Shown here: positions 12,701-56,890 of the stretch, piece after piece
Layout of the letters: the number at the start of each line of letters is the position of its first letter
Numbering within the stretch: position 1 is the stretch's first letter
Source of the DNA: Aplysia californica
Lineage: Eukaryota
Direction: 5' to 3'
DNA: 64,000 nucleotides
NCBI RefSeq assembly: GCF_000002075.1
Contig: NW_004797465.1
Span: forward strand, 1,013,674 to 1,077,673
Notes under the pieces: model-generated
The model's input: only the letters and a program-made list of their open reading frames with translations
Database searches by the model: none
What the model was told of the DNA's origin: nothing
Made by a program: the position numbers and the translations under genes

Positions 12701-15700
12701 TTCTCTGCTTATTTATGCAGTCATAGGCATATTGGAGGAAGACATTCTTTTTTCAGTGTCTCCAACTTGATATTATGTTAGCAATCAAGACAAGTATCTA
12801 AGAGTTCATGCTGCTTTTGGTAAAATCATTAAGCCGAAGTGAAAATAGGCACTTTGTATGGGATTTTGAACAGGGAAATAGTGCTTCGATCTACAAAGAG
12901 ACTTCAAACAAGAGATGTGGAACTGCTCTCTCTCACGAAGAAAAATGAGATGTCGAGTTGACATGAATTGTGTTTTTCCTGCTCTACGATTGGTCAGTTA
13001 ATGTGAGGTGTAACAGGGGGAGAAGGAGCATGTTCCAAGAAAAATGGCTAGCTTTTTTTCCTTTTTCATTAATTTTTCAAATGGGAATCATTTCTAAATA
13101 AATAAATCAGCTTTTAAGAATAAGGTTTTTAGTTGGTTTGTTCCTTCTTTCCTATCAAATGTTTATCATCTTTTTACTTCTCCGTCTTTTTTCTATATGT
13201 TACTCGCTAGTAACAGCTCTAACCTTCGACACTTATATGACCTAATTATGTTGCAAGTGCTGGGTAAGTGTTTTACGGCGCTCACAACTGCATAAGATCA
13301 TGTGAGCTCGCTGCAAGTGCTGTAAAACTCTATCTAAAGAATGCGGCTGTGAAATAAACACTTGTCTTTAAAACTTTGGCTTCCAACAGGCACTGTGGCC
13401 TTCTTCACGGCGTTGCTGTCCATGGCGTTCCTGGCCCAGCAGCTGCCCTTCTATGTCTGGTTCGGTGTGGTTGTGGCCACCCTCGGGTTCGGCGCGCTGG
13501 GCATCTCGGACTATGTGCACAACACTCCTGACGGGTTTGAGAAATACGGCATTGCTGCAGGTAATCACAGGAAATAGTGTTATAGTGACAATGATATACG
13601 ACATAGCTGCAGGTAATCACAGGGAATAGTTATAGTGACAATGATATTCTACATTGCTGCAGGTAATCACAGGGAATAGTTATAGTGACAATGATATACG
13701 ACATAGCTGCAGGTAATCACAGGGAATAGTTATACTCCCATACAAAACAGCTCCAGGCGGTTTGTAATAACTTCATGTCAACTCAAACCACAAGTGATTG
13801 AACATGCATACACACTCTTTAGATTAACACTAACACATAAGCAAACATTCATACTACCACAGCACAATCAATGACAATATGCACATAACATTATGTACAT
13901 GAAAGTCCCCTTTTTTATGTACAATTCTATTTTTATCTTTTTTACTTGTGTAAACATTAAGTGACATGGTTTTGGGCTTACTAGGAAGGGTTATGGAATT
14001 TTTTGTACGACCTCACAGGAAGCATACAGCGCAAGCAATAGATTAAGGACTCAAAACACTAACAAACTGACAAGATCTTTTACTGTCTATAGCTGGGAAC
14101 CCATTCCCATGGGGGTGAAGTGAGAAAATTTCCTATATAGTGTCTTTTTCAAGGACAAAATGCCGGGCCCCTCACAGACAACAACTGTTCCACCCAAAGC
14201 CCTGACCTGGCACTTATAGGTCCAATTTGTATTTCAAGTGCCGTAAAACTCTTACTAAAACAATAAAGCGCTGACCTGGCACTTATAGGTCCAATTTGTA
14301 TTTCAAGTGCCGTAAAACTCTTACTAAAGCTATAATAATATAAAGCCCTGACCTGGCACTTATAGGTCTCATTTGTATTGCAAGTGCCGTAAAACTCTTA
14401 CTAAAACAAAAAAGCGCTGACCTGGCACTTATAGGTCTCATTTGTATTGCAAGTGCCACAAAACTCTTACTAAAACAAAAAAGCGCTGACCTGGCACTTA
14501 TAGGTCCTATTTGTATTGCAAGTGCCATAAAACTTACTGAAACAATAAAGCGCTGACCTGGCACTTATAGGTCTCATTTGTATTGCAAGTGCCGTAAAAC
14601 TCTTACTAAAACAAAAAAGCGCTGACCTGGCACTTATAGGTCCTATTTGTATTGCAAGTGCCATAAAACTTACTGAAACAATAAAGCGCTGACCTGGCAC
14701 TTAAAGGTCCTATTTGTATTGCAAGTACCGCAAAACTCTTACTAAAACAATAAAGCACTGACCTAGCACTTATAGGACCTATTTATATTGCAGTGCTGTG
14801 AAACTCTTACTAAAACAATTTGTATTGCACATACCGTAAAACTCTGACTAAAACAATAAAGCCCTGACCGTTTCCTTCCTGTATCCACAGGAGATCTTCA
14901 GATCGGGATGGGACAGATCATGTTTGCCACCAAGCTGATTTATGAGGAGAAGTTCATCCGCAAGCACTCCATACACCCCATGAAGTTTTTGGGCTCAGAA
15001 GGTACTGTGTGGGTGGTTGGTGGGTGCTCTGGTGTGGGTTTTTGTTTTCCTTCTTTTCTATTAAACATCTATCATACTTATCTCTCCTCCTTGTTGTTTT
15101 CTGTGTATGTTACTCTCTAGTAACAGCTCTATTCTTCGGCACTTACAACATGACATAAATGTGTTGCAAGTGCTGCAAAACTCTTACTAAGTGGGTGGTT
15201 GGTGGGTGCTCTGGTGTGGTTTGCTTCTTCTTTCCTATTAAATTTCTATCGTCTTTATCTTCCCTCCTTCTATTTTGTGTTTGCTACTCTCTTGTAACAC
15301 ATCTATTCTTCGGCACTTATATGACTATGACCTTATTGTGTTGCAAGTGCCGTAAAACTCTTACTAAGACTAAACAAAGGTACTGTAATGGGTACTGACA
15401 AAGACAGACAGTGCTGCTTGTTGTTTTGAACCTCCCACTTTTTATGCTGTACAGAGTTTTGGTCTCTTCCTTGTCCTAGTCCACTCTTGCCCAGTGGTTT
15501 TCTCTGATTTCAAACAGTGTAGGCCTACATGTGGGTGGTTGGCGGGTGCTCTGGTGTGGTTTCAGCTCCTTCCTTCCTATCAAACATATATCGTCCAGAT
15601 CTCTCCTTCTTTTATATATTTGTTACTCTCTTGCAACACCTCTAATCTTCGGCACTTAATGACCTTATTGTGTTGCAAGTGCCATAAAACTCTTACTAAA

Positions 15701-18700
15701 ACAAAAAACTGTGTACATGTTATTCTGACTCTGAAAAGATGTTTGTAATAACCGTGACTCTGGTTTATTTGCTTTTTAAATGAAATTTGCTGTTGCTTTT
15801 GGTAGGATAACATACTGCCAAAAATAGAATGGGGCACTATGTTTACCTTTGGGGAATGATACTTTTTAATGATGAAGTTCATAGAATGAAATATTGAAGC
15901 CTTAGGACTCTCTTCATTTAAAATTTACTAAGTATTGTTAGTTTATTTACATGATATTAGTAAACATAATTTTTGCTTTTTTTTTTTCAACAATGCAATC
16001 TTCTCGATAAGGATGGACCTATTTTTTATTTAAGTGTGGTTTTGTCTTGCCTGCTTGGGTTCATATTAACTGCTTAGTGTCTGGCACCAAACGCTATTTT
16101 GAAAAATGCTGGCCCCCCAGGAAATCGCGGTCTTGCAATATTAGGCAAAAATATATCAACGCTTTAATTTTAACAGAATTTATAATACGAAATGGTGCGA
16201 GTACAGAACCGATAGGCCTACGTAAATCATGGTTTCGGCCCAGCTCTAGCCTAAACCTACTGGGCGTACTCTAAAAGCTATAACCGGAACTTCAGGCCGG
16301 AATACATTATGTACAACACACAATGAGACATGTATAGAGATCTAGATCTAATGTGTGTAAGCGTGCGCATGTGATAGAAAGTAGGTGTGTGTGTGGTATG
16401 CATGTGTGTGCGCGTGTAAGGTGTACGTGAGTGTGTGTGTGTGTGCACACGCGTGCGCATGAATATTGTTCGTAATCGTACATGATGCATGTGTCTGCAT
16501 ACACGGTAATTGGGCACCTAGTCTCAGTATCTACGTACACGGTAACCGGAAAGAAAATTAATCAATATTTTGTCCTGTGCTTCCACTTTAAAAAAAAAAA
16601 GAAAGCGACTTGTCGGGCTCGCCATCGTGACTGGTCAGTGAACCTGTGCTTTCGCATCACATTGTGAGTACCGGTTGGGGTCACCAAAGTTCATTCAAAG
16701 TCTGTGCGCTGCGAAGTATAGGGCTCCGGAATTGGGGGATTATTGATTTTTTTTTAAAGGTAGAGTCAGGAGAGGGCTTGGTTTGAAGGCAACACCGGAA
16801 GACAAAAACTGAACTTGGAGTTCTGAACTGCCCGGTTATCGTGTACATGACACTGAGACTACATACCTGGTTGCCGGTTACTGTGTACGTAGACACTGAG
16901 TTAAGCTGCGTTCACACGGGATCAAAATACAGATTACCGGTGTATCAAAGGTTTCAAGAGAAAAATAGAACAGGATCTGAAGTGATTGGAGCCTAAGCTA
17001 ATTTTGAATTTAGAGATTGTTTCGAAAATCTCCCATCAAATTTTTGGTTTTTATTAGACTAAACCTCATACTACACTTCTAGACTGTTTTTCTGGTATAA
17101 AATTTTACACATATGCATTTATATTATATGTAGCCTATAATACTTTGTTTTATGTACACATTTGTGTCGATTAATTTTTAAGATGTGATGTCTTTTTCAT
17201 TGTAATGCGCTTTGAGCATCTTTTAGGAAATGGAAATGCGCAGTATAAATGCTATTTATTATTATTATTAGGTCTTTGCATGAACCAAGTACCCGTTATA
17301 TACTAAATTTGGTCTAATTTTATGCCTTCATTTAAAAGTTATTACGAAAACCAAGGGTTCCATTATTTTGTGTCACGCAGTATTATATTATATTTGGTCG
17401 ATAACTTTATTGTTAACGTACTCGAGTGTTGTTACTGGTAAATATTGTTAATAAAATTTGTATAATGGGTCATGATTTTTTAAAAGGCTGTTCGGCTTTT
17501 ATGCTACCGATACTCAAATTGTCATGTTTTTTAAACTAAAAATGTTAAGCCCGTATTAATGCGCCAGGGATGGGAAGGTTGCAATTTTTTTGCTATTTTT
17601 GGGCAGTTTACCTTGCAATTTTTTGCAATTTTTCTATTTCAAAAATGCAATTTTCCGCGCGGCCAGAAAATGACATATGATGAGGCATCCCCCCATCAAG
17701 GCAGTGCTACTAACTGAAGTGCCTTTAGGCCATTCCCAAAGGGGGGGGGGGGTATTTACATGTTCTTATGCATAGTAGAATTGTAAATGGGATGATTTAT
17801 CAATGTCATGCTCATACTGTGCCGGAACAACATAGGGGGGAGAGATGTCGCTTTTTCTTTCCTCATCATACTACATGGCATTGGACAGAAGGGCGAGAGC
17901 CCAGATGTTGCTGGATCGATAACAACAACAACAACAACTTTCCTCATCATTACTATCGTCATTTTCCTCCCCTTCTTTTGTATGTTTATCACTCTCTTGT
18001 GAACTACTATTTCCGGGATGCCTCGATAGTCAAAGCAGACTTTGTGCTGTTGAGGCTAGAGAGGTGAGCAGAGTAAGCCCGATTCCCCGAAAGGACTTTT
18101 CTGCTGACATTCACCCCTGGACGCTTATATGACCATATGCAGTTGCAAGTCTTACACTGTGCAGTCGAAATTTAGTGGGTGCTTTTGTAAGTCCATTGTG
18201 TGTGATTCGTGTGGAAGTTTTAAGATGAGAATTTTTCCTCGTCTTTTTCAGCATCTTACGGTTTTGCGTTTGCCACGATTCTTCTCATCATTTTCAACCT
18301 GGTGGATGGAGTTCAGTACACGGAGATGCCAAACGGACATATCGAGGACTTTCAGGATGCAGCTTTTCAGCTTGCTGCCGACTGGCGTGTGGTGCTGGCT
18401 TTTGTGGGTAAGGTTTTGGTTAAACTTTTTATCTCTGGCGAGCCGCTACCAACGGCTCATGGTAGGAACGACTTTGACATTAAATTACTTTTTGGCAATT
18501 GCTGAAAACAGGTCTCTTTTATCAGGATTTCATTCATTAGATGAGGAACTATCAAAATAGGTTCACTTGTTTTGATTTAAAGACATATTCAGTGACGTTT
18601 TTGTGATTTTTAAATTAGGTACCAAAAAGGGCCGTGGCATAATGGGTTTACCCCGCCTCGGAGATAAAAGAGTCAGGCAAATAAAATCATTCCTTTTTTT

Positions 18701-19646
18701 TTTATTTGGTGTATTTGTCTTCCTATACTATGAGGGCACTTCCTCCTATAATATTTAATGATAGAAAATAACATTTATATAGCGCATATCCACACTCTAC
18801 AGTATGCTCTATGCTCTTTACGACTACTATTACACCAGCAGACCCGAGAACTCTCATAAGTTTGTTACTGCTTTTGGTATGGTAACAGACAAAAATACTG
18901 TGGTGCTCTGTGTTTACCTTTGGGGAATGATAGTGATATTTTCCAATGATGAAGTTTGTAGAATGACGTATGATTTCCTCCGTTGCTCTGTGCCAGGGTC
19001 GCTGCTGAGCTACATCGTATACACGTACCTGGGCCTGTTCCTGGTGCGCGACCAGGGGGCGCTGCCGCGGATCATGGTGGAGCTGCTGGTGTGGGCCTTC
19101 TACTGGGGCATCTGTTTGGCTCTCCACTGGGAGCAGTTCTTTATTGCTCAGGTNNNNNNNNNNNNNNNNNNNNNNNNNNNNNNNNNNNNNNNNNNNNNNN
19201 NNNNNNNNNNNNNNNNNNNNNNNNNNNNNNNNNNNNNNNNNNNNNNNNNNNNNNNNNNNNNNNNNNNNNNNNNNNNNNNNNNNNNTTATTGCTCAGGTGA
19301 GTGGGCTCTCTGTCGCTGTCTCTCTCTCTCTCTCTCTTAGTGGCTCTCCACTGGGAGCAGTTTTTTATTGCTCAGGTGAGTGGGCTCTCTGTCGCTGTCT
19401 CTCTCTCTCTCTCTCTTAGTGGCTCTCCACTGGGAGCAGTTTTTTATTGCTCAGGTNNNNNNNNNNNNNNNNNNNNNNNNNNNNNNNNNNNNNNNNNNNN
19501 NNNNNNNNNNNNNNNNNNNNNNNNNNNNNNNNNNNNNNNNNNNNNNNNNNNNNNNNNNNNNNNNNNNNNNNNNNNNNNNNNNNNNNNNNNNNNNNNNNNN
19601 NNNNGAGCAGTTTTTTTATTGTTCAGGTGAGTGGGCTCTCTGTCGC

Positions 19647-19681
<35 letters not shown>

Positions 19682-20934
19682 GTGGCTCTCCACTGTGAGT
19701 CGTGGGAGCAGTTTTTTATTGCTCAGGTGAGTGGGCTCTCTGTCGCTGTACCTGTCTCTGTGTGGCTCTCCACAGGGAGCTGTTCTTTATTGCACATGTG
19801 AGCAGGGCTCTCTGTCTCTCTGTGTGTCNNNNNNNNNNNNNNNNNNNNNNNNNNNNNNNNNNNNNNNNNNNNNNNNNNNNNNNNNNNNNNNNNNNNNNNN
19901 NNNNNNNNNNNNNNNNNNNNNNNNNNNNNNNNNNNNNNNNNNNNNNNNNNNNNNNNNNNNNNNNNNNNNNNNNNNNNNNNNNNAGACACAGAGAGACGCA
20001 AAGCGACAGGGAGTAAAAGTGGCAGAGACAAACGGAGAGAGACAGAACCAGAGACTGAAACACAGAGATAGAGACAGAGAAACAAAGATGGGAGCAGTGA
20101 CAGCGACTAGAGAGAGAGAGACCAGAGAAAGAGAGAGAGAGAGAGCAAGAAAGAGAAACAGCAACACAGAGACAGACACAGCGACAGACGGACACGGTGA
20201 CAGAGAGTGCTTAAGTGCTTCGATGTCAAACATAGGAGACCCAAGTTCGGTTCCGGAATGAAGAAAAATTTTTATCGAGCATCTCGGTCTTTCTGCTTGG
20301 ATGTTTTATTCCTCTCAGACTAGGTTGGCCCCGACAGGCAAGTTTGGAAGCCCACCTCCCAAATAATCTGAATGGGGCCATGGGGATGTAAAAACACCCA
20401 TATATATTTTTTAAAAAATTTTCTATTGGCATGGGTGGTGGTGATGTTACGCTTTCTTAGTGTGTGATTGGAGGATGCTCTGGTGAGGTTTGCTCCTTCT
20501 TTCTTATTCAATGTACATTGTCCTTACTTCTCCTCCTTGTTTCATTTGTATGCTACTCTCTAGTAACACCTCTAATCTTCAGCATTCGTCATATGACCTG
20601 ATTGTGTTACAAGTGCCGTAAAACTCTGACTCCGACTAAATGTCCTCAGGTCCCGGGGTTTGTCCTGATCCTGAAAGGCATCCTGGTCTATGCCCACATC
20701 CTGGTCATCCCGTGCTTCAACTGCTGCCAGAACGACGAGGTCATCGGCCTGGACGACGACATGCCGCTCGATGGCAACGACGACTTGCAGGATGGCGAGG
20801 ACGACGACCGGATGTTGGACCTTGTCCACGATGCGGATAACGGCATGGAGGTTGGCGAGAATGAAGGCGACTCTCTCATTCTTGCGGATCATGATGACGG
20901 GGATGAGAATCCTTTGCTGGGTGTTCGTCGATAA
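671..20934 (+). CDS. SLC35F6: SLC35F6-like solute carrier (DMT superfamily), 9 coding exons: join(671..750,5327..5399,6503..6611,8122..8577,13390..13560,14891..15001,18252..18407,18997..19151,20650..20934), 1596 nt = 531 aa + stop
   Basis: All 8 introns are GT-AG with matching phases (2,0,1,1,1,1,1,0) and the total length is divisible by 3. The translation has motifs collinear with SLC35F6 as I recall it: PPA..., SSFxMLxG, GDL, EEKF..KH..HP...G.E, ED..DA..Q, L.WE.F...Q..GF..L..G...Y. It has about 10 hydrophobic segments. The divergence suggests a paralog. Confidence 0.85.
4490..5011 (-). mobile_element. tRNA-headed SINE with Nin/Deu-type central domain and LINE-like hairpin tail
   Basis: On -: A-box-like tggtcgagagg and B-box-like cttcgaatcc (~4947-5003). 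Central gcacgttaaagatccc...cgataagagtagg...cccgggcaaaatt resembles the Deu/Nin domain as I recall it. Tail atgaccataggcagttgcgagtgccctaacacttac. Confidence 0.7.
5327..5399 (+). CDS. SLC35F6: SLC35F6-like exon 2 (WQKELIVQGTPTRKPHAFDHTFVM)
   Basis: tggcag| acceptor and ATG|gtaagt donor. Resembles the W...G....H.F.H.F segment of SLC35F6. Confidence 0.75.
6503..6611 (+). CDS. SLC35F6: SLC35F6-like exon 3 (WFLKQLMQFGLLFLWMAIDKNWLGFSRFRHGEVNQR, TM2)
   Basis: tttctgcag| acceptor in phase 0 and G|gtaatt donor in phase 1. The phases fit both neighbours, but sequence similarity is weak. Confidence 0.65.
6811..6988 (+). mobile_element. Short retroposon family A (~175 bp), full-length copy
   Basis: GTGGGTGGTTGG 5' end, pyrimidine-rich body, GTTAC-N6-GTAAC hairpin, 3' hairpin, and taaaacctctactaaaac tail. 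More than 15 related copies or fragments in the window. Confidence 0.75.
7561..7725 (+). mobile_element. Family A, decayed copy
   Basis: Degenerate but collinear match to 6811-6988. Confidence 0.55.
7760..8113 (+). repeat. 60-bp minisatellite x6 abutting the exon 4 acceptor
   Basis: Unit agctgtactgtaagtcaagtaagtaagaccgctgtggttcatgtctattctcatcatcat. Confidence 0.95.
8122..8577 (+). CDS. SLC35F6: SLC35F6-like exon 4 (acidic D/E/N-rich loop + LLYFPPAFFH...SSFGMLK)
   Basis: Lies in ORF 8100..8597. gtctcag| acceptor and AAG|gtgagt donor. Confidence 0.9.
9860..10270 (-). mobile_element. RTE-clade LINE reverse transcriptase fragment with internal deletion, nested in the Sola element
   Basis: TDGSLFNL...DLFFAGDAA (degenerate FADD box) is joined directly to the C-terminal RRLRWLG...RIPKQFLYGQL..GKRPRGR.KLRYKD. 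Confidence 0.75.
10830..11950 (-). pseudogene. Frameshifted Sola-type DDD transposase remnant
   Basis: Motifs spread over several frames: LPKLPSHYCRR, FHPRKDRCDLC, ALYYKTKLNVHNFT, SDGCG, KFLEKGYTQMKVNSAH. Confidence 0.75.
13131..13338 (+). mobile_element. Family A copy with an inverted tail fragment inside its 3' hairpin (~13264-13310)
   Basis: Collinear with family A. Ends about 50 nt before the exon 5 acceptor. Confidence 0.65.
13390..13560 (+). CDS. SLC35F6: SLC35F6-like exon 5 (GTVAFFTALLSMAFL...KYGIAA)
   Basis: Lies in ORF 13362..13577. ccaacag| acceptor, CAG|gtaatc donor, GC3-rich codons. Confidence 0.9.
13543..13734 (+). repeat. 50-52-bp minisatellite x4 spanning the exon 5 donor
   Basis: gctgcag|gtaatcacagg recurs, with GT at 13561, 13613, 13663 and 13713. 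Confidence 0.95.
14197..14868 (+). repeat. ~66-77-bp minisatellite x9-10 built from the family A 3' hairpin/tail
   Basis: Unit aaagcgctgacctggcacttataggtc.atttgtattgcaagtgccgtaaaactcttactaaaaca. Confidence 0.92.
14891..15001 (+). CDS. SLC35F6: SLC35F6-like exon 6 (GDLQIGMGQIMFATKLIYEEKFIRKHSIHPMKFLGSE)
   Basis: tccacag| acceptor, AAG|gtactg donor, and the EEKF..KH..HP motif. Confidence 0.9.
15009..15709 (+). mobile_element. Three family A copies (15009-15190 and 15191-15377 head-to-tail; 15531-15709)
   Basis: Each starts GTGGGTGGTTGG and ends aaaactcttactaa. The first begins 7 nt into the intron after exon 6. Confidence 0.8.
16067..16904. mobile_element. Probable TTAA-flanked MITE with internal inverted repeats
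   Basis: Ends ttaactgcttagtgtct... / ...agacactgagttaa. Internal ctcagtatctacgtacacggtaaccgg (16524-16549) is inverted at ~16874-16900 and ~16832-16860. Confidence 0.45.
17700..18157 (+). mobile_element. Short retroposon family B (~400 bp; shares both hairpins and tail with family A)
   Basis: Collinear with the reverse complement of 41750-42150 and 56497-56890. Confidence 0.75.
18252..18407 (+). CDS. SLC35F6: SLC35F6-like exon 7 (ASYGFAFATILLIIFNLV...HIEDFQDAAFQLAADWRVVLAFV)
   Basis: tttttcag| acceptor, G|gtaagg donor, and the ED..DA..Q motif. Confidence 0.88.
18997..19151 (+). CDS. SLC35F6: SLC35F6-like exon 8 (GSLLSYIVYTYLGLFLV...LHWEQFFIAQ)
   Basis: tgccag| acceptor and CAG|gt donor immediately before an N gap. 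Confidence 0.88.
19118..19828 (+). repeat. ~79-bp tandem repeat containing the exon 8 end, its donor and (CT)n; interrupted by N gaps
   Basis: cag|gt recurs, with GT at 19152, 19297, 19376, 19455, 19627 and 19727. Confidence 0.9.
20432..20640 (+). mobile_element. Family A copy ending 9 nt before the terminal-exon acceptor
   Basis: ...caagtgccgtaaaactctgactccgactaaa tgtcctcag|. Confidence 0.7.
20650..20934 (+). CDS. SLC35F6: SLC35F6-like terminal exon (last TM + acidic tail ending DENPLLGVRR*)
   Basis: tcctcag| acceptor in phase 0, in ORF 20602..20934, TAA stop. Confidence 0.88.
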   Translation, partial: VPGFVLILKGILVYAHILVIPCFNCCQNDEVIGLDDDMPLDGNDDLQDGEDDDRMLDLVHDADNGMEVGENEGDSLILADHDDGDENPLLGVRR

Positions 20935-21066
20935 GACTATCGGATGTTGGACCTTGTCCACGATGCGGATAACGGCATGGAGGTTGGCGAGAATGAAGAC
21001 GACGCTCTCTTTCTTGCGGATCATGAGGACGGGGATGAGAATCCTTTTCTGGGTGTTCAATGATAA
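20803..21066 (+). repeat. 132-bp tandem duplication of the last 44 codons, including the stop
   Basis: 20803-20934 vs 20935-21066, high identity, in frame. Confidence 0.95.
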
Positions 21067-23705: not shown

Positions 23706-24016
23706 GTTACTTACTTACTTACTTACTACCCATTACACCATCTGGCGTTTAGGGCAGCAACAAAGGATCTCCAGCTCTGTCTGTTTCGGGCCATCTTGGT
23801 CAGACTGATTCCAGGACTTCATTTCAGACTCTACTGTGCGTCTCCAGGTCACTTTGGGTCTGCCCCTCTTGCGACGTCCTTCGGGTGTCCAGTGGAGGGC
23901 AGTCTTCACAATAGAGTCTGGCTCTCTTCTCAGAACATGTCCAATCCATCTCCACCTTCTCCTTTTTATTATGGTTGTCATGTCCTCTTGCCTACATTTA
24001 CGTAACAGATCTGCGT
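23706..24016 (-). mobile_element. RTE-clade LINE 3' fragment with (TAAG)n tail
   Basis: ORF 23733..23981 reads IKRRRWRWIGHVLRR...ALHWTPEGRRKRGRPKVTWRRTVE, followed by (taag)n on -. Confidence 0.85.
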
Positions 24017-26146: not shown

Positions 26147-26828
26147 CTGTCCTCGTTGGATTTATGATTATGCGATTGTGCGGCCACGGTGCGTCGCGTT
26201 TTTTTTGCGTAATTCTGCAACAATTGCATAATTTTGGATTCCCCGCGTTTTGTCACGTTTTTTTTTCCTTTTTTTTCTCAAAACAATTAATTAACGCCTT
26301 GCCAGATGACTGAAGGGAGGTAAACATCGTAATTAGTCTCATTTAAGGGACAAGTTGGCTATTTCCCTTGGTAGAAGATCTTGGTTAGCATGTTCAATTT
26401 TTCAGTCTGTCAAAATTCAAAAGTTGTTGTTCTCATGTCTGCTGATGTTTCATGTTTGACAGGTGTCCCTGGTTTTAGTTTTAGTAATGTGCCAGCATCA
26501 GAGGTCCAGATGTCCTTTTTTTAAATTTTTACTTTTTTCTTTCCTCTATAGATCTAGATCTACAGCTGAAAGTTGCAGAGATTATATTTTTTGGTTGTTT
26601 TTTTTTTTCTGACTGATGTGTATTGTTTTCTTTCCAAATACACAAGAAATTACTGATACTGATAAGTTCTGTTTTCCATTTTTCTGTACATAAAACATGA
26701 AAATCATGAATATTCTTGTGAAAAAAGTGCAAAACATGTCGCGAATGGTGTTACGGTAACTTGCTTAATTTTTGCATAATTTTGTGCTTAATTTGGCCGT
26801 CTAAATTTGCCTAATTCTACGGGGACAG
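26147..26828. mobile_element. Non-autonomous DNA transposon, imperfect TIR CTGTCCYCGT, 6-bp TSD AATTAC
   Basis: aattac|ctgtcctcgttgga ... ttctacggggacag|aattac. Confidence 0.6.
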
Positions 26829-28302: not shown

Positions 28303-28519
28303 TTTCTTTCCTTTGGAGCATATCAAGGAAGTCCAGATCTGAAGGGAGGGAAGTCATACTTGAGCAATCTACTTCCTCAATGTCCGCTGCCCAGTCAAAG
28401 CTGTATCATGCAATCATCAATTATGCACACTGCTTCTCAATGTAATTCTCCTTCGGAGCCTATATCAAGGAAGTCAAGATCTGAAGGGAGGGTAGTCGTA
28501 CTCGGACAATCTACTTCCT
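28303..28519. repeat. Two ~75-bp direct repeats 144 bp apart, each self-complementary at its ends
   Basis: atatcaaggaagtc.agatctgaagggaggg.agtc.tact....caatctacttcct occurs twice. Confidence 0.75.

Positions 28520-30233: not shown

Positions 30234-30238
<5 letters not shown>

Positions 30239-30279
<41 letters not shown>
30239..30279. repeat. (TA)n microsatellite
   Basis: Read directly from the sequence. Confidence 0.95.
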
Positions 30280-30280
<1 letters not shown>

Positions 30281-31536: not shown

Positions 31537-31716
31537 GGTTTGGTTTTAGTAAGAGTTTTACTGCCCTTGCAACACAAACAGGGCATATAAGTGCTTAAGA
31601 TTAGAAGTGTTACTAGAGAGAGTAACATTGAAAAAAAAAGAGGGAGAGATAAAAACGATGGTTGTTCGATACGAAAGAAGTAGCAAACCACACAAGAGCG
31701 CCCACCAACCACCCAC
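31537..31716 (-). mobile_element. Family A full-length copy in the presumed 3' UTR of the zinc-finger gene
   Basis: Direct sequence match to the other copies. Confidence 0.75.
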
Positions 31717-34700: not shown

Positions 34701-34825
34701 TCCCAGCGGCAACATTTTAGAACTAAGCATGCACAGAAATGGGAAGTTTTGCACACATTCTTTCACATCCGGTTCCACATTGAGGCACACATATGCCCAT
34801 GTCGATCTGCTGGAATGGTATCAAG

Positions 34826-37338: not shown

Positions 37339-40300
37339 CTGAGGAGGAGACAAGGGGAAGTTTAGATTTAGTTTTTGTAAGATTTTTACAAAGCTTGCAA
37401 CACAAATAGGGCACATAAGAGCTGACAAAAAGAGGTGTTACTTTGAGACTAATACAATCACCAAAATGCCAGTGTGGCGAAGCAGATCTAGCTGTAGAAT
37501 CCCTGCTTCAGCAGTGCAGGACACACAGGGCCCTGTGACAGGAGATATGGCAATTTCATTGACACTACAGGAGAAGCTGTATGGGCCAACATAAGAACAG
37601 AGCAGGGCAGCCCAGTCGGTCGAGAAGAAAAAAAAAAAAACAGAGTGTATTCCTGGAGAGTAACATAACAATAAAAGGAGGAGAGATGATGATGATGATA
37701 GATATTTGATATGAAAGAAGGAGCAAACTACACCAGAGCCCTCGCCAACTACCCACAGAAGGGCAGGGGTTGTGTAGGAGGGAAACTAGCTTAATCATGG
37801 CAAGCAAAGAATGAGATACCACTAGCTGCATGTCTTCCAACTTTGATGGCTTGTGCCCCAGGCCAACAGCAGCTTAATAATAATGATTATTTATTACAGC
37901 TATATAGCTTTTTTTCAGAAGTTGCTCAATGTGCTTTACAATAACAAAAAAGAAAATACAATCAAACCTGCTCTAACAGCCACCGGTATAAGACAATCAC
38001 CTGAACAAATAGCCACTTCCCATCCCCCCTCCCCCCCCCCTGCGCATTTTCCACCCATAATACAGACACAGAGTAAGACACTTTCAAAATTGTATATCTC
38101 AACCCTTAAGATTCTGGTCCCTGATAAATGTTTGCCCGATAAGCGCAATCCCGCGCGGCGCTCCACAGCTGGTCCCTGATCAGTCATCGTCCCGCGCGGG
38201 CAACGCATTTCGTTTAGGGCGGGGTCTGCATCTGTGTGCTAAAATGTGTGTGGGTCAGTCTGCTTGTGCCTGTGTGTCCATCTGGAACTTACTGCATTGT
38301 TTTGCAACGCGAGGCGTTGGTAGAGATAACAGAGCGTCGTTGAGACGTTCATCCAATGAAATATGAGCATTTTGACCCAGTTAGACACTTGAGGGACTCG
38401 AAAGGATATTCAGGAAATAGGACTTTCATCTTTCAATGCAAACACCTTTCCTCACTTTTCAAACGATCTAATTCTTACACCAAACGTTGTTTCCTGATGT
38501 AAATAATCATATTTGGTGGTTTTTTAACCATTGTCCTACCAGAGGGAGAAATTTGAGAGCAACTGAATAAAAAAAATATTCGGAAATTATCCCATTTTTT
38601 TCCTCTTTCGAACGATAGCTGATAAGCAGCTGTTCGCAAGTTCATTCATAATAGGTGTGAAATCTGGAAAACTCTGGAAAAGTTATTCGATTTGGTGTAA
38701 CTTCCAATCTCAGCGTCTCTGATCAACCGACGAGGAGATAATTGGATTATTCGTGTGATCGTAACACTTATTCATTGATCGTATCAGTTTGCTGTAAAAG
38801 ATGAGGTGTTTCCCTGACCTGCCGCGGCACGCTCGCGTGACCGGTGTCTGACCCAGGCACCCCGCGGCACAAGCTTGCGGGCGACGTAAGTGGGACATCT
38901 ATCGATAAGAGCCCTCTTCCGGTTAACCCCGCAGGACTAGAGTTAATGATATTAATAAATAACTATTTACGCAGAGCACTTCCCGTAATAGTGTGCTCAA
39001 TTCACCTCACAGTAATAAAAAGAAAATGAAATAAGATTAGTTATTCTTTTCCTCCCTACCCCCTCATCTCTCTATATTTCTCTTCCCACTCCCTCCCTCC
39101 AGTTGCCACAACATTACATTGACCAAGACGGTAAGAAAAGTAAAGTATACACTTCAGCAAAAAAATCTTACTGGCAGTAGATCTAGGGGTGGAGCCTGCA
39201 GACTCTGGTGTCTGCTTCGATCGCTTTCCCGGCTCCGACAGGCCATGGTTAGTGCGGCGGTGAGCGTTGAGGGAGGAGGCCTGGGAGAACACTCGGTCGC
39301 AGTCCTGGCACGGGTGCTTGCTGTCTTTGTCGTGCACCCTCAGGTGCCGGTAGATGCTGGCTATGCCGTACACCTTCCCACAGACCAGACACTCGCACCG
39401 CTTTTTCTGCTCCTCGTCCGTGAACATCTGAAAAAGAACATCGGTTTCGAAATTAGTTCAGTTTTAGTTATAGTAAGAATTTCATGGCACTTACAACACA
39501 ATTAGACCATACAAGTGTCGGAGATTTGTGATATTACAGTATAATCCACTTCTATCGACATGCTTTGGGAAGTGGATTTGATGGCGGTATATAAAAATGT
39601 CAATAAATGAAAATATAAAGAGAAAGAGGAAAAAACAAGGGGAGGGCAGCGGTAAAAAACAACACTACTTTTTAAAGGTGGTTGCTTCCATTGATTCTTG
39701 AAACTATCAAGAGGTGGCCGGGGGGGGGGGGTTGGAGTTACGGCATGAAAATATAAAGCCAAATCAAATAGGGTTCTTTCACAAAGCACAGTGAAACTAA
39801 CAAGAAGAAGCAGAGGGGGGGATGGAGTTACGGTACCAAAGACAGAGCAGCGCAGGAATGAACTTCACACAGGGCAAACTTTGTTGTAGCATCCTTGTAA
39901 AGCCTGTTTATGGCCGCTTGCTGGGGAAAATGGAAAGGCCAGGCACTGACTCACTGACCGCGGCATTTGCCAGCAACAGACTGAGAATGGGATGGGGAAG
40001 GGGAGTGAGCGATCAGGAGTGGGGGTAGGGAGGTGATGCCCAGAGTGCGAGATGCTCACGACTGTGAGGCACTGTACTGTGTTGGAGACTACACTGTGTA
40101 GGCCCTATATGACCTACTAAAGCCTGGTGTGTTATATTAGGTGACTTGGCGGGTATGTGGACTTAATGAAGAACTAAAATGTTGAAAGTAAGCGTGGCTT
40201 TTTCCCCCATTTATGTTCGTGGGCTTCACCAGGTACCCAGGAAGCAGGTCAATAAAGAAGAAGGGGCCGAAAAAAAGTCGATATAAGAGAAATTGTTTAG

Positions 40301-43300
40301 TGAAGCTATTCAAGGAAAAATTTCGTAATCGGAAAATATGTTGATATGTCAAAATGTCGATAAATCGGACGTCGATGTAAGTGGATTATACTGTACTACA
40401 AAGTAACACCCAAAGAAAAGGTTTTAGTGTTAGTTTTAGTAAGAGTTTTACGGCACTTGCAACACACAAAGAAAAGGAGGAGAGATAAGAACATAGATGT
40501 TTGATAGGAAAGAAGGAGCAAACCACATTAAAAAAAGGTGTGTGCATTCATAAAGACCTATCTGAAATACCAACAGACATAATATGGTATGCCCTCATCA
40601 ATCTTTTTAGCACACTTCTCTTCTCTACACAAGTCAAGGAACAAGGGTCTGCTTTGCTACTATTCCAACAAAGTTTTTTTTATTTTAAAGAAAAAAAACA
40701 CACAAAAAACATGTCTAGGAAACTGATGAGAGCAGAAAAAAGAAAATTCCCACTATGAGAAAATTAACTTATAAATACCACAGATTTCCTTACCTTGTAC
40801 AAGTGTTTTCTTTCCTTTGGTACAATTTTATTTTTCTTCACTGCTGAGTCTGCCTTGGCTGGAGTGGCGTCACCTTCCTGCACCGGTGTCACAGATGTCA
40901 TGTCTTCCGTGATACTAGCAGGCGGGACAACGCTCGTAGCTGCCCCCGCGGACAGCCGAGGAAGGTCTAAGGCCGTTGACTGACCAAGGATAGGGAGCCC
41001 CAGATTTTCATCCATGTCTGCTAGGGCTTCATCCCCAGCATCCAGATTAACTGTGTGCACGAGGTTGATGCTGTCTTGCAGAGAATTTTCATGGCTGGTC
41101 AAATTGCTGGGGCTGGCATTCTCTTCGTAGGCCGTCACAGCCGAGAGAAGGGTGTTGGGTGACAAAGTCTGCCGCAGACGACTTTCCAGATAAGCGAAAT
41201 CCTGCTGGGCCAGGTTAAATCCTGCCAGCTCCTGACTGAAGCTGCCTGGGTTGGCCGAAATCTGCCGCAGGAATCCCTGGATAAAGTTGTCTTGTCTCAA
41301 GCTGTCCGGGAAGTCAAGCTCATTCTGCACAGTGGAGCTGAAGAGGCCGTTGTTGTTGATCTCCGGGTCTCTTTGGCTGGCCGGGTACATGGGAGTAGCA
41401 GGGAGGGAGGAGGACGACTGGTCGGCTAATTTGGGAGTGTCTCGCGTCGAATTGAAACCTGAGGGTGCTCCTGAAAAACCCATCTGATTCACAGGTGGAT
41501 TGTAAGACTGTTAGACAGAGGAAGGGGGAGGGAAGATGTTAATTTTGAATTTAAATACAAGTTGCATGGCACATGCAATACAAACAGGTTACATAAAAGC
41601 TAAATATTAGAGATGTTACCAGAGAGTAACAGGATACAAAGAAAAGAAGGAGGCATTTATAAGGACAAGAGATGCTTGATAGGAAAGAAGGAGCAAACCA
41701 CACCAGAGAACCCACGAACAGGAAAGGTCAAAATAATCCAGTATTTGTTTATTTTTTGTAGAGGTTTTACGGCGCTCGCAACTGCATAAGATCATATGAG
41801 CGCCAAGGGGTGGATGTCAACAGAGAAGTCTTTACAGGGAATCAGACTTATTCTGCTCACCTCTCTAGCTTCAACAGCACAAAGTCTGCTTCAACTATCA
41901 AAGCACCCCGGAAATAGCCGGTCACAAAAGTGTAACAAACATACAAAAGAAGTAGAGGAAAAAAGTGATGATAGTAAGGATTAGGAAAGAAAAAGCAGCA
42001 GTTCCCTGTTGCAGTTCAGGCAGTTATGAGCGTGACATTGATGAATCAGCAAATTTGCAATTACAATTCTACTGTGCATAAGAACTCGAGATGTTAATTT
42101 CCCCCCCTCTGGGAATGACCTAAGGACATTTCAGTCAGTAGCACCGCCCCGATAATCCAGTACTCAAAAACATGGGAGTAAAAAGACTTGAAAAGATGTA
42201 AACCATATCATAATGATCATCTACACAGGAGTTCTTCCAAACATTAATGTAAGAAGGAAAACAATCCTTCACCACTGTTGTCTCCATGGAACAGACGTAC
42301 CTAAATACATGGTGTCAGGAGTTCAGCACAGAAAAAAAACTCCACAAATCATTCTCCATGATCCAAGGCTAATGCAAACTAGTGCCATTGGTGTCATGTA
42401 TGAACAGATTAGCTGGCAATTTCGTGCCTAAAACTCTATCAGTTTTGTCTGGACTTTGTTATGTGGGTTGCATAGTCAAGTGGTTTTACTTCAATTTGAC
42501 ACAACAAATATGTTTGACATAATTTGGTGAATACACAGCTAGAGTCAGTCATTATCGATACATTTTCTTTCTTTTCAACCCCATTTATCATAACAAAATT
42601 TCTTTTATATCTTTCTGAAAAAGTTCATGCCACAAAAAATTGAATGCTCGTCCTGAATTTTGGCCGTGTACAGAACTTATATAGGGTGTCCTTTTCAAAG
42701 ATATTGTCAACTCATTAGGCATACAGTAGTATCGTATGAAATTTGATGGCTTCAAGGCAAAAGGGAAGATCAGCAAAGAGATGGACAGACTGAGTCAAAG
42801 AGACCCTTCATAGGCACAATATAATGATCCAAAAGCAACCCACCTAACCCATGTCTGACAATTACATTTCCCCATCGACAGACACCTAATCGTAAAAGAG
42901 GACAGGAAAAGTCCAAAGTAAAAGTAAGTCAACGCATTCCAATAAACAATACTCCAGTCTGAGCACATCATCCATACGTACTATAGCAGAGTTCTCCATC
43001 GGGGCCACAGGCTCGACTCTCTGGTTCAAGCCCAGCTGCCGATTGTAGGTGGGATCGGAGAAAAACTCTTTGCTCCACGACTCAACCGTGATGGAGGCCA
43101 CAGAGGAAGGAAGTGAGGCCCCATTCCAGGCGGACGAGTCGTGCTGGTGTTCCGAGGTCGGTCGAGGTTGCGTGTGAGAGGAAGTCCACTGCTGGGGCTG
43201 GGAAGACGTCCCGGGGGGCACTTTATGCATCTGGCCCCGAGACAGGGGAGAAGGCGATTGCTCATGTAGTGATGACGATGAGGTGGGTAACCCTGTGCTG

Positions 43301-46300
43301 CTCTGGTTGGTCGACATGGTAGACGGAGGTCCCTGCTGTCTGGTGTTGGAGCTGTAGAAGCCTGCCTCTGAGGAAGACAACAGAGCAGCTGCTGCCGGTT
43401 CGTGCGGGAAAGAGGAAGTCCCCACCCTCGGAGCAACGGTTGTTGCGGAGATCGGAGCCGGGGGTTGAGGAATCCACGTGGAGGAGGGTGGAGTGAGCTG
43501 CGAATGTCTGCCACGTTGGCTCCATGACGAAGTCGGGTGAACAGATGAATCGTTTCTTATGTTAGATGTCGTCTGAACTTCCTCTCTTTTCGTGGATAAA
43601 TGAGTTGAAGTCTGGCTCCCCCATCTTTTAGACTGAGGCAGCTCAGCAAACGATACATCAACACTAGTGGAGGTGCATGAACTGACCACTGCTGCGGCCC
43701 CGGACTGTTGTGGCATGGACAGTTTCCCAACAGTGGGGCCCAATATGAAGTCTCGGGGCAGAAGGATGCGGTTTCCGTTTCCTCCAGGTACAAACAATCC
43801 ATTGATGGGAACCATAGAATCTGAAAATATGACCATATATATGTATATATTTACAATTCCTGAACAATTTACAAAGAACAAGCAGTCTATCGTCAACAAG
43901 CTGTATCAACATTGTTTTAGATTTAGTGAACGTTTTAAGGCATTGGCCACATAAATAGGTCACATAAGTGCCAAAGATTAGTTGGGGTTTTTTTTTAGTT
44001 TAAGTAAGTGTTTTACGGCACTTGCAACACAATAAGGTCATATAAGTGCCGAAGATCAGAGGTGTTGCAAGAGAGCAACAAACACAAAGAAGAAGAAGGG
44101 GAGATAAAGACGATAGACATTTGACAGGAAAGAAAAAGCAAACCACACCAGAGCACCTCCCCAACCACACACAAAGATTAGGTGTTACTAAGAGTAGCAT
44201 ACAAGAAAAAAACAACAACAAAAAACAAGAGGAGATTTAAGGCTGATAGATCCAGATGTTTGATAGGAAAGAAAGGTTGCAAGTTCCACAAATAATGTTT
44301 TTAATGATTAAAAAAATCCAGGAAAATAGTAGGAGAACAACATCCAAAAAATTGTTTCCCTTTCCTTTCTTCATTACATTGAAAAAATAACAATAAACCA
44401 TGAACACTCTACAATATGGCAAAAGCATTACAAAGACATTACAAAACAAATGTGACACTCAGCTGTTTCAAAATTTTTTTTTTCAAAACCCTCAATTTTC
44501 TCAGAACTGTTCGTTTGTGACCCACTAACTTCACAGTGGCTGTAACTTTGGAACCAAATTAGCTAGACTAATACCATTTTCACCACTTGTAGAGCTTAAA
44601 CATGTCTTATATTAGACACCCATAGCATTATATACTCAAATTATGACATGTGACCCTTTCGCGTATAGCTACATATTATATCATACTTGTCAATAGAGAA
44701 CACATCTGGATTAAACAGTAAAGAAAAGAAATTATAGCTAGATAATCTTAACTCTTTTCTTGCAATGATTAAGTACCATGTATAATGTCAGTTCATAATT
44801 GGCCCATTATTTCAAAACAAAACTCATTAGAAAGATACTCCTGCACAATGACAGGACTGAAATGAAGAACCTGTGTAATTAACTTATGGGAGACAATAAA
44901 ACAATTATCATTCACAAAGAAGACCAAATTGAAATTATCCTTCTCTATCAAAACCTAAAGACCTGACTTCACACAAAGCAGCTCACCTGTGATGTCTGGG
45001 ACTTCCTCGTCCAACAAAGGCACAAGCTTGTACAAGATCATCTTGCTCCCATGTCTGGTAGTTCCCCCATCCAGACCATCAACTGACCGTGCCGCTGTAT
45101 CTGGCTTTGCTTTCGCATTCTCGTCAGACAACTCTGAATGCTCCGCAGTCCAGATCATGTGATCGTCTCCCTGCTTGCCTCCATCTAGCTGGCCCGAGAA
45201 GAGACCAGTTTCAGGATCTAACATGCTCGTTGTTTCCAGTTCATCCTTAGAATTGCTCAAACCGTTCGAGTCCCTGCTTACATCAATCTGTGTTCTCTCT
45301 TCGGTCGCCTCGTCCTGTTTGAGATGCTTCTCCGAATGACTTTCGCTGATCCCCGACATGGAGTCAATCTCTGAGTTGGAAGGAGTAAGGCCTGCTTTAA
45401 CCAGAGACATCTGGTCTCCTGTGGAGAGACTTTCTGAACCATTTTCACGACTTGACCTTGATGTTCCATCATCGTTATGGTTAGCCTTCTTTTTGGTATT
45501 CCTTTTACTCCTCGTGGAAGGAACAGAGTCAGAGTTTTTATTCTTTATCGAAGGGCTGGGGTCAGAGACACTGGCATTTGAACTTTCTCGGTCGGAGATA
45601 GACTTGTCCTTTGTTCTCAAGCTGTGCCTCAAACTTCTCTCTGGTACAGTTGCACTACCGTCAGCTTCCAAATCTGGCACATCGGTAGACCAATCAGCCT
45701 TGTTTCCCTTTTGCCCCTTTTCTGGAGAGTTCGATCTTTTCAAAACTTTTCGTGCCCGTGGTAACTCATCCACAAAAGGTGCTGGTAGCTGGCGCTTACC
45801 ACTAGACACTGGAGATGATTTGGCTGACTTTTGAGGATGGTCTCGTTCACTTCGCCGTGTGGTGATAGAGGACCGTGACACCAAACGTCTCGCTGCTCCA
45901 ATTCTTCGCCTGTGCCTTGATGAAACTTTTGATTTGAAACGAGTTGAAGAAGCAGGGTTAGCAACTTTCTTCTCCACATGTTTGCTATCCTTCCTCTCAG
46001 ATCCCTCCTTTCCACCAGTCAGTTTGTCTTTTTCAGCTGTGGTTGCAGTCGTATTCTTTTTACCAGAGGCTTCAGTTCTCATTTCATCTTTCTTGTTGTT
46101 GGATCGAGTGCTCAATTTTGAGTTAGAATCTTGATCTGTCTTTTCATTTTGCTTGCTGTGTCTGGTGATAATTTTTTCCTGATTACCCAAGGGCTGAGCA
46201 TCATTTGACGACTGACTTACGGAGCTTCTCCTCTTTGACCTCATACTTCGGCCGGGGGCCTCCATCTCTACCCCACCCTCCTCTTTATAGTCTACTCGCC

Positions 46301-56736: not shown

Positions 56737-56890
56737 ATTAGGACAGAAAAAGCACTGTTGTAGTTCAGGCACAGTTATGAGCATGACATTGTCAGATCAG
56801 CCCATTTACAATTCTATTGTGCACTAGAACGAGAAATGTCCCCCCCTTAGGGAATGGTCTAAAGACACTTCAGTTAGTGGAACCGCCCCG
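56497..56890 (-). mobile_element. Family B full-length copy
   Basis: Direct sequence match. Shows the GTCAC-N6-GTGAC variant of the small hairpin. Confidence 0.78.

What the first reader, a model, noticed from the sequence alone, without database searches (positions are those of the whole stretch)
13131..43985. A short retroposon whose CTAAA/CTGAC tail repeatedly sits in the branch-point zone of host introns
Seen: of 13 inferred 3' splice sites, 7 have a sense-oriented family A/B tail ending within ~100 nt upstream (acceptors 13390, 14891, 18252, 20650, 43820, 39427, 37338). A tail-less sense copy also ends ~100 nt from 41507. In four cases (14891, 20650, 39427, 37338) the tail or its derived array reaches within ~10-30 nt of the AG and supplies CTAAA/CTAAT/CTGAC at the usual branch-point distance, e.g. 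aaaactctgactccgactaaa-tgtcctcag. With roughly 20 tails over ~50 kb of gene span, a rough expectation is only a few percent of acceptors. Established: metazoan branch sites resemble YTRAY, and non-LTR elements with microsatellite tails can prime at target sequence resembling the tail. Inference: either the element targets branch-point-like sites and restores them with its own tail (a splicing-neutral safe harbour), or hosts have co-opted the tails as branch points. I do not know of this being described, but I cannot search.
Basis: partly seen in the sequence, partly recalled or inferred. Interest (0 to 1): 0.8.

Follow-up and report, generated by a model that had tools for sequence, protein, structure and literature searches.

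The report
Sense retroposon tails crowd splice acceptors
A very abundant short retroposon of this (probably sea-slug) genome lies mostly in the same direction as its host genes, and its 3' end, which looks like a splicing branch site, sits just upstream of exon starts more often than chance allows; it does not aim at branch sites, and whether its tails are used in splicing is still untested.

Summary
All eight introns I could map in the window's two genes have a sense tail of family A/B ending 8-93 nt before the exon. Uniform placement predicts 0.7 of 8.

It also holds outside this hand-picked window:
- In 166 kb of myosin genes chosen by Pfam hits, copies are 43 sense to 11 antisense. Sense tail ends pile up in the last 100-200 nt of introns (8, 4, 1, 2, 0... 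per 100-nt bin). Donors and antisense copies show no such peak.
- Whole-genome counts of an acceptor-like motif after the tail fall with distance: 138, 106, 82, 52. A non-AG control falls less (146 to 99; odds ratio 1.8, p = 0.006). The genome-wide effect is therefore modest.

In 28 clean target-site duplications of young copies the preference is only T|A(A/C)A, and CTRAY occurs once.

The co-option idea stays open. At 11 acceptors the best branch-like motifs within the usual distance lie in the tail (TACTAAA, CTGAC). I could obtain no RNA or lariat data.

Acceptor 20650 is ambiguous; 20678 fits the stronger donor.

This scan saw the same pattern in other windows of this genome, with mixed follow-up verdicts.

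The parts
6811..6988 (+). Reference young family A copy (178 nt, 97% identical to the young consensus), flanked by an 11-bp target-site duplication TTTTCTCCTCT. It is not near a mapped acceptor.
8121..8579 (+). Gene 1 exon (EamA/SLC35F-like transporter), conserved in related-species contigs. Its acceptor has no tail within 100 nt; the nearest tail ends at 7713.
13134..13338 (+). Composite old A copy with an inverted tail fragment at 13263-13309. The sense tail ends 51 nt before exon 13390-13560.
14196..14857 (+). Array of about 10 tail units (69-nt period) ending 33 nt before exon 14891-15001. CTGAC motifs of the array lie in the branch zone.
15009..15378 (+). Two tandem A copies inserted 7 nt after donor 15001|GT. 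The target-site duplication AAGGTACTGT duplicates the donor.
   Evidence: donor conserved in L061
17700..18175 (+). Family B copy (about 400 nt plus an internal insert) with a degenerate tail, ending 76 nt before exon 18252.
20461..20641 (+). A copy whose tail (CTCTGACTCCGACTAAAT) ends 8 nt before exon start 20650, or 36 nt before the alternative exon start 20678.
43914..44281 (-). Three sense A pieces (44173-44281, 43990-44171, 43914-43981). The last tail ends 93 nt before exon 43820.
41543..42150 (-). B copy (41738-42150) followed by an A copy (41543-41719), which ends 35 nt before exon 41507.
39461..39539 (-). 5'-truncated A copy whose tail (CTTACTATAACTAAAAC) ends 33 nt before zinc-finger exon 39427-39173.
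37366..37463 (-). 5'-truncated A copy whose tail (CTTACAAAAACTAAAT) ends 27 nt before last exon 37338-34829.
19154..19983 (.). Three assembly gaps inside a tandem-repeat stretch of the intron before exon 20650/20678. They were not filled, and no frame or element used here crosses them.

Best explanation
Families A (about 178 nt) and B (about 400 nt) are abundant, recently active short retroposons of the LINE-dependent kind, without a tRNA-type head. They share a 3' module of about 65 nt that ends in ...GCGAGCGCCGTAAAACCTCTACTAAAAC(WAAAC)n.

Shown here:
- Insertion has only a weak site preference (T|A(A/C)A, target-site duplications of 8-14 bp).
- The family is strongly sense-biased in genes.
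- Its 3' ends are over-represented in the last 100-200 nt of introns.
- TACTAAA/CTGAC-type motifs of the tail lie 20-50 nt from many acceptor AGs.

Inferred: the pattern comes mainly from a splicing filter, not from aimed integration.
- A sense copy ends in a near-consensus branch site (UACUAAA(A)C against UACUAAC) followed by an A-rich stretch free of AG. An insertion into, or just upstream of, the branch-point/polypyrimidine zone therefore leaves a working 3' splice site. The duplicated target keeps the pyrimidine tract next to the AG.
- An antisense copy would bring a decoy TTTTGTTTTAG acceptor and be removed by selection.
- A further local insertion bias towards pyrimidine-rich intron ends probably adds to this.
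- So does preferential retention of copies whose tail has become the branch site.
For: - Window: 8 of 8 mapped introns have a sense tail within 93 nt of the exon, against 0.68 expected.
- Independent myosin set, orientation: 43 sense against 11 antisense (p = 1.4e-5).
- Independent myosin set, position: sense tail ends per 100-nt bin upstream of 53 homology-anchored exon starts run 8, 4, 1, 2, 0, 0, 0, 2, 1, 0. The 5' ends downstream of donors run 2, 1, 2, 4, 4, 0..., and antisense copies 0-1 per bin.
- Six acceptors have a tail within 100 nt, against 1.35-2.7 expected (p = 0.003-0.02). Nine of 29 sense tail clusters end within 100 nt of a coding exon.
- Whole-genome counts of TACTAAAAC, a gap, then Y10NYAGG: 138, 106, 82, 52 at gaps 8-38, 39-69, 108-138, 408-438. 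The YTGG control gives 146 and 99. Odds ratio 1.8, p = 0.006.
- Young copies next to verified exons: L001 lies 19 nt before a CDK5RAP3 exon (Pfam E = 1.3e-7). L031 lies 41 nt before an exon conserved in other species.
- At 11 of 16 nearby acceptors the best branch-like heptamers between -15 and -55 lie inside the tail.
- Flanks of young copies are T-rich on the element's sense strand (36% T against 27% A).
Against:
- The genome-wide signal is modest. A pyrimidine tract alone, without AG, is also enriched about 1.5-fold after tails.
- Another follow-up in this scan (s1-716523) reported no genome-wide aiming.
- A tolerance filter explains why copies are not depleted near acceptors, but does not by itself explain an excess over deep intron.
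- Nearby copies are only slightly older than the rest (0.79 against 0.83 identity, p = 0.026), so retention is weakly supported.
- With only two verified exons, the young-copy sample does not show an insertion-level excess (p = 0.07-0.18).
- Where the tail is 30 nt or more from the AG, a native branch-like motif sometimes persists.
- The independent sample is small: 53 acceptors from one gene family.
Confidence: 0.5

Rival explanations
1. Aimed integration, the reader's first idea: the element or its LINE partner primes at branch-point-like target sequence through homology with its CTAAA-type tail, then restores the branch site with its own tail.
For: - Target-site duplications start with A-rich bases (18 of 28 have A at position 1), which fits short annealing to the A-rich tail.
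- L007's duplicated target contains CTGAC, and L001 may have inserted at TTAAAC.
- Several young copies landed in older tails (L011, L026).
Against: - CTRAY occurs in 1 of 28 target-site duplications (plus 5 nt either side) on the sense strand, and in 1 of 28 on the antisense strand.
- The consensus is only T|A(A/C)A, far too common a site to give the observed excess.
- Most young copies lie at unrelated sites.
Confidence: 0.08
2. Pure insertion hot spot: the ends of introns (pyrimidine tracts, possibly open chromatin beside exon nucleosomes) are preferred for physical reasons. The branch-like tail is incidental and is not used.
For: - Pyrimidine tracts without AG are also enriched directly after tails (146 against 99).
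- Young copies already lie next to exons (L001, L031, and the young copy in the C306 myosin gene).
- Native branch-like motifs survive in some cases.
Against: - The excess is larger for the AG-ending motif than for the control (odds ratio 1.8).
- In five cases the tail ends 22 nt or less from the AG, so no other sequence is available at the usual branch distance.
- A hot spot alone does not explain the near absence of antisense copies at acceptors.
Confidence: 0.2
3. Retention only: insertions are uniform, but deep-intron copies are lost to deletion and decay, while copies next to splice signals are shielded.
For: - Nearby copies are somewhat more diverged (p = 0.026).
- Copies are generally concentrated within 500 nt of exons on both sides.
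- Related-species introns are much shorter, 250-560 nt against 1.3-4.8 kb.
Against: - There is a strong asymmetry. In seven of the eight window introns the tail lies far closer to the acceptor than the head does to the donor.
- The first 100-nt bin holds 8 tail ends at acceptors against 2 element 5' ends at donors.
- Copies 91-96% identical to the consensus already lie 19-41 nt from exons.
Confidence: 0.12
4. Ascertainment and chance: a repeat-rich window was flagged because it looked striking, and there is no general effect.
For: - The window was chosen after the pattern was seen.
- The genome-wide proxy shows only a 1.8-fold AG-specific excess.
- One earlier follow-up (s1-716523) reported no genome-wide aiming.
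Against: - The independent myosin sample, chosen without looking at repeats, shows the same peak.
- The motif count falls steadily with distance: 138, 106, 82, 52.
- Near against far for the AG motif gives p = 3.5e-10.
Confidence: 0.08

Closest known systems
Mollusc SINEs and short retrotransposons without a tRNA head ('LP-SINEs'; Nin-DC and CORE SINEs of Aplysia), Matetovici et al. 2016, PMC4758252
   Same: Short, very abundant elements with target-site duplications. Modular build in which different heads and bodies share one 3' tail. No tRNA-derived head in some families.
   Different: That paper does not contain the words introns, orientation or splice. I did not align A/B to its consensus sequences, so membership in a named family is untested.
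Splice signals supplied by Alu, MIR and other transposed elements in mammals (antisense Alu exonization; element-derived branch points and pyrimidine tracts). From my own knowledge and from titles found (PMC2330237, PMC2533698, PMC6093180).
   Same: A SINE supplies splice signals, and orientation decides the outcome. The antisense A-rich tail reads as a pyrimidine tract plus AG.
   Different: In mammals, to my knowledge, such elements are depleted within about 100-150 nt of constitutive acceptors, and the usual outcome is a new alternative exon. Here sense copies are enriched next to constitutive acceptors of conserved exons, and would serve the existing exon.
Introner elements (mobile elements that create whole new introns and carry splice signals; my own knowledge)
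   Same: A mobile element carries part of the splicing signal and sits in sense within genes.
   Different: These introns pre-date the element. The same intron positions exist in a related species without it. The element fills only part of the intron and carries no donor or acceptor.
Stringent-type LINE/SINE pairs with 3' stem-loop and short tail repeats (for example UnaL2/UnaSINE; my own knowledge)
   Same: A conserved 3' module with an inverted repeat (GGCGCTC...GAGCGCC) followed by short A-rich repeats of variable length. Composite insertions that suggest template jumping.
   Different: The partner LINE was not identified. The hairpin of the one copy I folded is no more stable than shuffled sequence (z = -0.78).

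Membership tests
LINE-dependent non-LTR retroposon (SINE in the broad sense) | Flanking target-site duplications of variable sequence | tested here: met
   28 of 39 young copies have clean duplications of 8-14 bp. Window copies 6811 and 15009 do too.
LINE-dependent non-LTR retroposon (SINE in the broad sense) | High copy number, 5' truncation, and a 3' end with a variable A-rich repeat | tested here: met
   1897 first-look candidates for one query. The tail 9-mer occurs about 170 times per Mb in my gene-rich sample. Many copies are 5'-truncated.
Classical SINE | 5' head derived from tRNA, 5S or 7SL RNA, with a polymerase III promoter | tested here: not met
   ARAGORN finds no tRNA-like sequence in the window and Rfam gives no hit. 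Family A also contains a T6 run, which would be a polymerase III terminator.
Classical SINE | 3' tail shared with a partner LINE | not tested
   No LINE with this tail was looked for.
Nin-DC / LP-SINE families of molluscs (PMC4758252) | Sequence homology to the published central domain or the LINE-derived 5' end | not tested
   The published consensus sequences were not at hand as references. First-stage notes s1-688755 and s1-691650 only claim a shared tail.
Element-derived functional branch point (exaptation) | Branch nucleotide mapped inside the element by lariat reads or mutagenesis | not testable with these tools
Only the position argument is available.
Site-specific (targeted) retroposon | Conserved target sequence at the insertion point | tested here: not met
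   Only T(-1)|A(+1) is preferred (15 of 28 and 18 of 28). CTRAY occurs in 1 of 28.
Introner element | The insertion creates the whole intron, which is absent from relatives | tested here: not met
   Introns before exons 13390 and 14891 exist at the same positions in related-species contig L061, which lacks the element.

The most novel reading that the evidence does not exclude
In this genome a retroposon family preferentially settles, in sense, in the branch-point/polypyrimidine zone of introns, and its tail has taken over as the working branch site of thousands of constitutive acceptors. That would be the reverse of the mammalian exclusion zone. It would make the element a self-contained, splicing-neutral cassette whose tail sequence was shaped by that niche. 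There is a hint of drift towards CTGAC/CTAAC in nearby tails (3 of 12 against 6 of 65; not significant).
Probability: 0.3. Interest if true: 0.8.

Novelty: new variant of a known kind. Interest (0 to 1): 0.58.

Why it matters
In mammals, transposed elements are largely kept out of the last 100 nt or so of introns, because that zone holds the branch site and the pyrimidine tract. A family that is enriched there, in sense, and that carries a near-consensus branch site at its 3' end would show how an element's own sequence can open a niche closed to other elements. It would also show that a sizeable share of an animal's splice sites can come to depend on repeat-derived signals.

The question is directly testable with data that already exist for this species: gene annotation, RNA-seq lariat reads and population resequencing. 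The strong sense-orientation bias (about 4:1 to 10:1) is unusual for intronic retroelements and deserves its own explanation.

Tried and rejected
The kinesin, dynein and chaperonin exon lists could therefore not be analysed. I did not try to fetch this genome's DNA by another route.
Exons were searched one at a time.
- A homolog search with the last exon of gene 1 found nothing, so 20650 against 20678 stays open.
- Hexamer and codon coding-potential models were too weak or overfitted to call exons. The automatic exon detector on young-copy flanks gave as many hits in the controls, so it was dropped in favour of Pfam and homology checks on single candidates.
- Pfam gave no hit for candidate exons in L007, L008, L031 and L032. 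L031 was later confirmed by homologs. The other three remain only plausible.
- The tail hairpin is not significantly stable in the one copy folded.
- Literature searches found no description of this pattern. That is not proof of absence.
- The idea that the elements created these introns was rejected.
Full report
**What the window is.** The window is eukaryotic DNA, G000:C195:1013674-1077673, from a 927,310,431-base assembly in 4332 contigs. I did not verify the species.

The window holds two genes.
- Gene 1, on the + strand, is an EamA/SLC35F-like transporter (weak Pfam hit). Its exons are 8121-8579, 13390-13560, 14891-15001, 18252-18407 or 18412, and a last exon starting at 20650 or 20678.
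- Gene 2, on the - strand, is a large C2H2 zinc-finger protein. It has a 5.5-kb exon (50498-44988) followed by exons starting at 43820, 41507, 39427 and 37338.

**The elements.**
- Family A is about 178 nt long. The consensus of 39 young genomic copies starts GTGGGTGGTTGGCGGGTGCTCTGG and ends GCGAGCGCCGTAAAACCTCTACTAAAACAAAAAA.
- Family B is about 400 nt long and shares the last 65 nt or so with A.
- Neither has a tRNA-like head (ARAGORN none; Rfam none).
- Young copies are 94-96% identical to the window copy at 6811-6988. One search gave 1897 first-look candidates.
- They carry clean target-site duplications of 8-14 bp.
- Some insertions are composites, a full copy plus an extra tail fragment inside one target-site duplication (L032). 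Tail-tail arrays also occur (contig C479; window 14196-14857). Both fit reverse-transcriptase template jumping. That reading is an inference.

**Check of the observation.** Every intron I could map in the window, eight in all, has a sense tail ending 8-93 nt before the next exon. The distances are 51, 33, 76 and 8 nt in gene 1, and 93, 35, 33 and 27 nt in gene 2.

The acceptors are supported in three ways.
- Donor and acceptor phases match throughout gene 2: donors TCACAG|GTGAGC at 44987, ATA|GTACGT at 42983, TACAAG|GTAAGG at 40794 and CTGCCA|GTAAGA at 39172. They also match in gene 1 (direct reading).
- Zinc-finger Pfam hits lie just inside exons 39427 and 37338.
- Two contigs of a related species carry the orthologous exons with splice sites at the same positions and no SINE. 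Their introns are 250-560 nt, against 1.3-4.8 kb here.

One correction is needed. Acceptor 20650 is in phase only with a weak donor (AAG|GTTTTG). The strong donor G|GTAAGG, with the exon ending at 18407, is in phase with the AG at 20676-77, which puts the exon start at 20678. Either way the acceptor lies 8 or 36 nt after the tail.

The three assembly gaps (19154-19983) lie within that intron, inside tandem repeats. Nothing in the argument crosses them, and I did not fill them.

Under uniform placement of the observed tail clusters, 0.68 of 8 introns would have a tail within 100 nt of the exon. In seven of the eight introns the tail is far closer to the acceptor than the head is to the donor.

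**Independent test.** The window was picked for this pattern, so I took an unrelated sample. I found myosin-head exons with Pfam PF00063 in the whole genome and fetched 166 kb around them.
- Orientation: 43 sense against 11 antisense (p = 1.4e-5).
- Sense tail ends per 100-nt bin upstream of 53 homology-anchored exon starts: 8, 4, 1, 2, 0, 0, 0, 2, 1, 0, over nearly constant coverage.
- Sense 5' ends downstream of donors: 2, 1, 2, 4, 4, 0...
- Antisense copies: 0-1 per bin.
- Six acceptors have a profile-detected tail within 100 nt, against 1.35-2.7 expected (p = 0.003-0.02).
- Reading downstream of every sense tail shows 9 of 29 tail clusters ending within 100 nt of a coding exon. Two of those exons are further myosin exons that were not in the hit list.

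**Genome-wide proxy.** The pattern was the tail 9-mer TACTAAAAC, a gap, and a strict acceptor-like motif (ten pyrimidines, N, YAG, G).

| Gap (nt) | YAGG motif | YTGG control |
|---|---|---|
| 8-38 | 138 | 146 |
| 39-69 | 106 | not run |
| 108-138 | 82 | not run |
| 408-438 | 52 | 99 |

(for YAGG; for YTGG.)

- At least a dozen of the 82 matches at 108-138 come from one unrelated repeat.
- The near YTGG count of 146 is inflated by a repeated composite.
- Pyrimidine tracts as such are about 1.5-fold enriched after tails. The AG-ending motif is enriched beyond that: odds ratio 1.8, p = 0.006, or about 2.2 once the composite is set aside.
- Only 2 of 53 known acceptors meet the strict motif, and the far count is near random expectation. 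The true enrichment of real acceptors is therefore larger than 1.8-fold but cannot be measured this way.
- A very rough scaling suggests that a few thousand acceptors are involved, a small percentage of the total.
- The effect is real but uneven, and this window is an extreme case.

**Targeting.** The reconstructed pre-insertion sites of 28 young copies show T at -1 (15 of 28) and A at +1 (18 of 28), followed by A or C, then A. CTRAY occurs once on each strand. This is an ordinary weak endonuclease preference with short A-rich annealing. It is not aiming at branch sites. The flanks are T-rich on the element's sense strand (36% T against 27% A), so even young copies share the orientation bias.

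**Young copies next to exons.** Of 39 young copies, two lie next to verified exons. L001 is 19 nt before a CDK5RAP3 exon (Pfam E = 1.3e-7, with the match starting at the exon's first codon). L031 is 41 nt before an exon conserved at 74-91% identity in contigs from other samples. Three more (L007, L008, L032) have convincing splice signals and open frames but no homology support. Two of 39 is not significant against a 1-2% expectation; five of 39 would be.

Copies near acceptors are slightly more diverged than the rest (0.79 against 0.83 identity to the young consensus, p = 0.026). So I cannot separate insertion bias from retention. Both probably contribute.

**Branch sites.** At 11 of 16 nearby acceptors the best match to TACTAAC with an A between -15 and -55 lies inside the tail: TACTAAA, AACTAAA, TTCTAAC or CTCTGAC. 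In five cases the tail ends 22 nt or less from the AG, so no other sequence is available at the usual distance.

Where the tail is 30 nt or more away, a native branch-like motif can survive downstream of the insertion or inside the duplicated target. Examples are the young copy in the C306 myosin gene, with target-site duplication CATGCTCT followed by cacttatgactg, and L007, whose duplication contains CTGAC.

CTGAC or CTAAC variants are more frequent in nearby tails, 3 of 12 against 6 of 65. This is a hint only. No branch point has been mapped.

**Most likely mechanism.** The following is inference. Integration is weakly selective, and a splicing filter shapes what remains.
- Sense copies bring a branch site and an AG-free A-rich end, and the duplicated target keeps the pyrimidine tract. 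Insertions in the otherwise forbidden zone therefore survive, and may become fixed once the tail is the branch site in use.
- Antisense copies read TTTTGTTTTAG|TAGAGG, a decoy acceptor, and are purged. This would explain the sense bias.
- The excess over deep intron needs something more. That could be a local insertion bias towards pyrimidine-rich intron ends, which the YTGG control hints at, or retention.

**Earlier notes of this scan.** Several first-stage notes report the same picture in other windows. Two follow-ups exist. One found about four-fold enrichment in one gene (s1-717340). The other found no genome-wide aiming but a strong sense bias (s1-716523). My results fit both: no aiming by sequence, a strong sense bias, strong local enrichment and modest genome-wide enrichment.

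**Literature.** Full-text searches found the mollusc SINE survey (PMC4758252), which does not contain the words introns, orientation or splice. They found nothing describing a SINE enriched upstream of acceptors.

**Limits.**
- One gene family served as the independent sample.
- The genome-wide motif proxy is crude.
- There is no RNA data.
- The partner LINE is unidentified.
- The species is not verified.

Noticed in passing
window 13544-13734: A 50-bp tandem repeat (3.8 copies) includes the last 7 nt of exon 13390-13560 plus its donor (GCTGCAG|GTAATCAC). Up to four identical donor sites therefore stand in a row.
   Followed up: no
window 15002-15387: Two tandem A copies were inserted 7 nt into the intron. 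The target-site duplication AAGGTACTGT duplicates the donor site. The upstream copy is the one conserved in the related species.
   Followed up: partly
window 20452-20460 and 20641-20650: The sequence before the head of the A copy (ctttcttag) resembles the acceptor after its tail (tgtcctcag), matching at 5 of 9 positions. It may be a decayed target-site duplication that copied the acceptor, as first-stage notes report elsewhere in this genome.
   Followed up: no
window 20640-21100: The last exon of gene 1 is open in all three frames for about 200 nt. It contains a 132-bp in-frame tandem duplication (20809-21058) that encodes an acidic repeat.
   Followed up: no
window 7760-8113: A 60-bp tandem array (5.9 copies, 97% identical), rich in GTAAGT-like motifs, ends 8 nt before the acceptor of exon 8121.
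   Followed up: no
window 53218-56900: An 1825-bp tandem segmental duplication (300 nt at 100% identity) carries two near-identical B copies at 54671 and 56496.
   Followed up: no
window 35001-35237: A 33-bp coding tandem repeat (7.4 copies) lies in the last exon of gene 2 and gives a histidine/glutamine-rich peptide repeat.
   Followed up: no
L032:677-770; G000:C479:17064-17190 and 22785-23093: Full copies are followed by extra tail fragments, inside a single target-site duplication in L032, and tail-tail-tail runs occur on contig C479. This suggests template jumping by the reverse transcriptase, which would seed the tail arrays.
   Followed up: partly
L060, L061 (contigs from run SRR32535475): A related species has two paralogous or allelic copies of the gene 1 exons. 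Their introns are 250-560 nt and contain no A/B element, so the introns here are 5-9 times longer.
   Followed up: partly
window 1-21000 against 29000-60000: Element orientation flips with gene strand. Nearly all copies are + in the left third of the window and all are - from 29 kb to 60 kb, including regions where I mapped no exons. This suggests that transcription units extend beyond the mapped exons.
   Followed up: no
genome-wide: The sequence TACTAAAAC(T)nAAAAACTCTGCTTCCTCTTCCTTCACTGG recurs at least 20 times. It points to another element family whose head regularly follows an A/B-type tail, or to a longer composite element.
   Followed up: no
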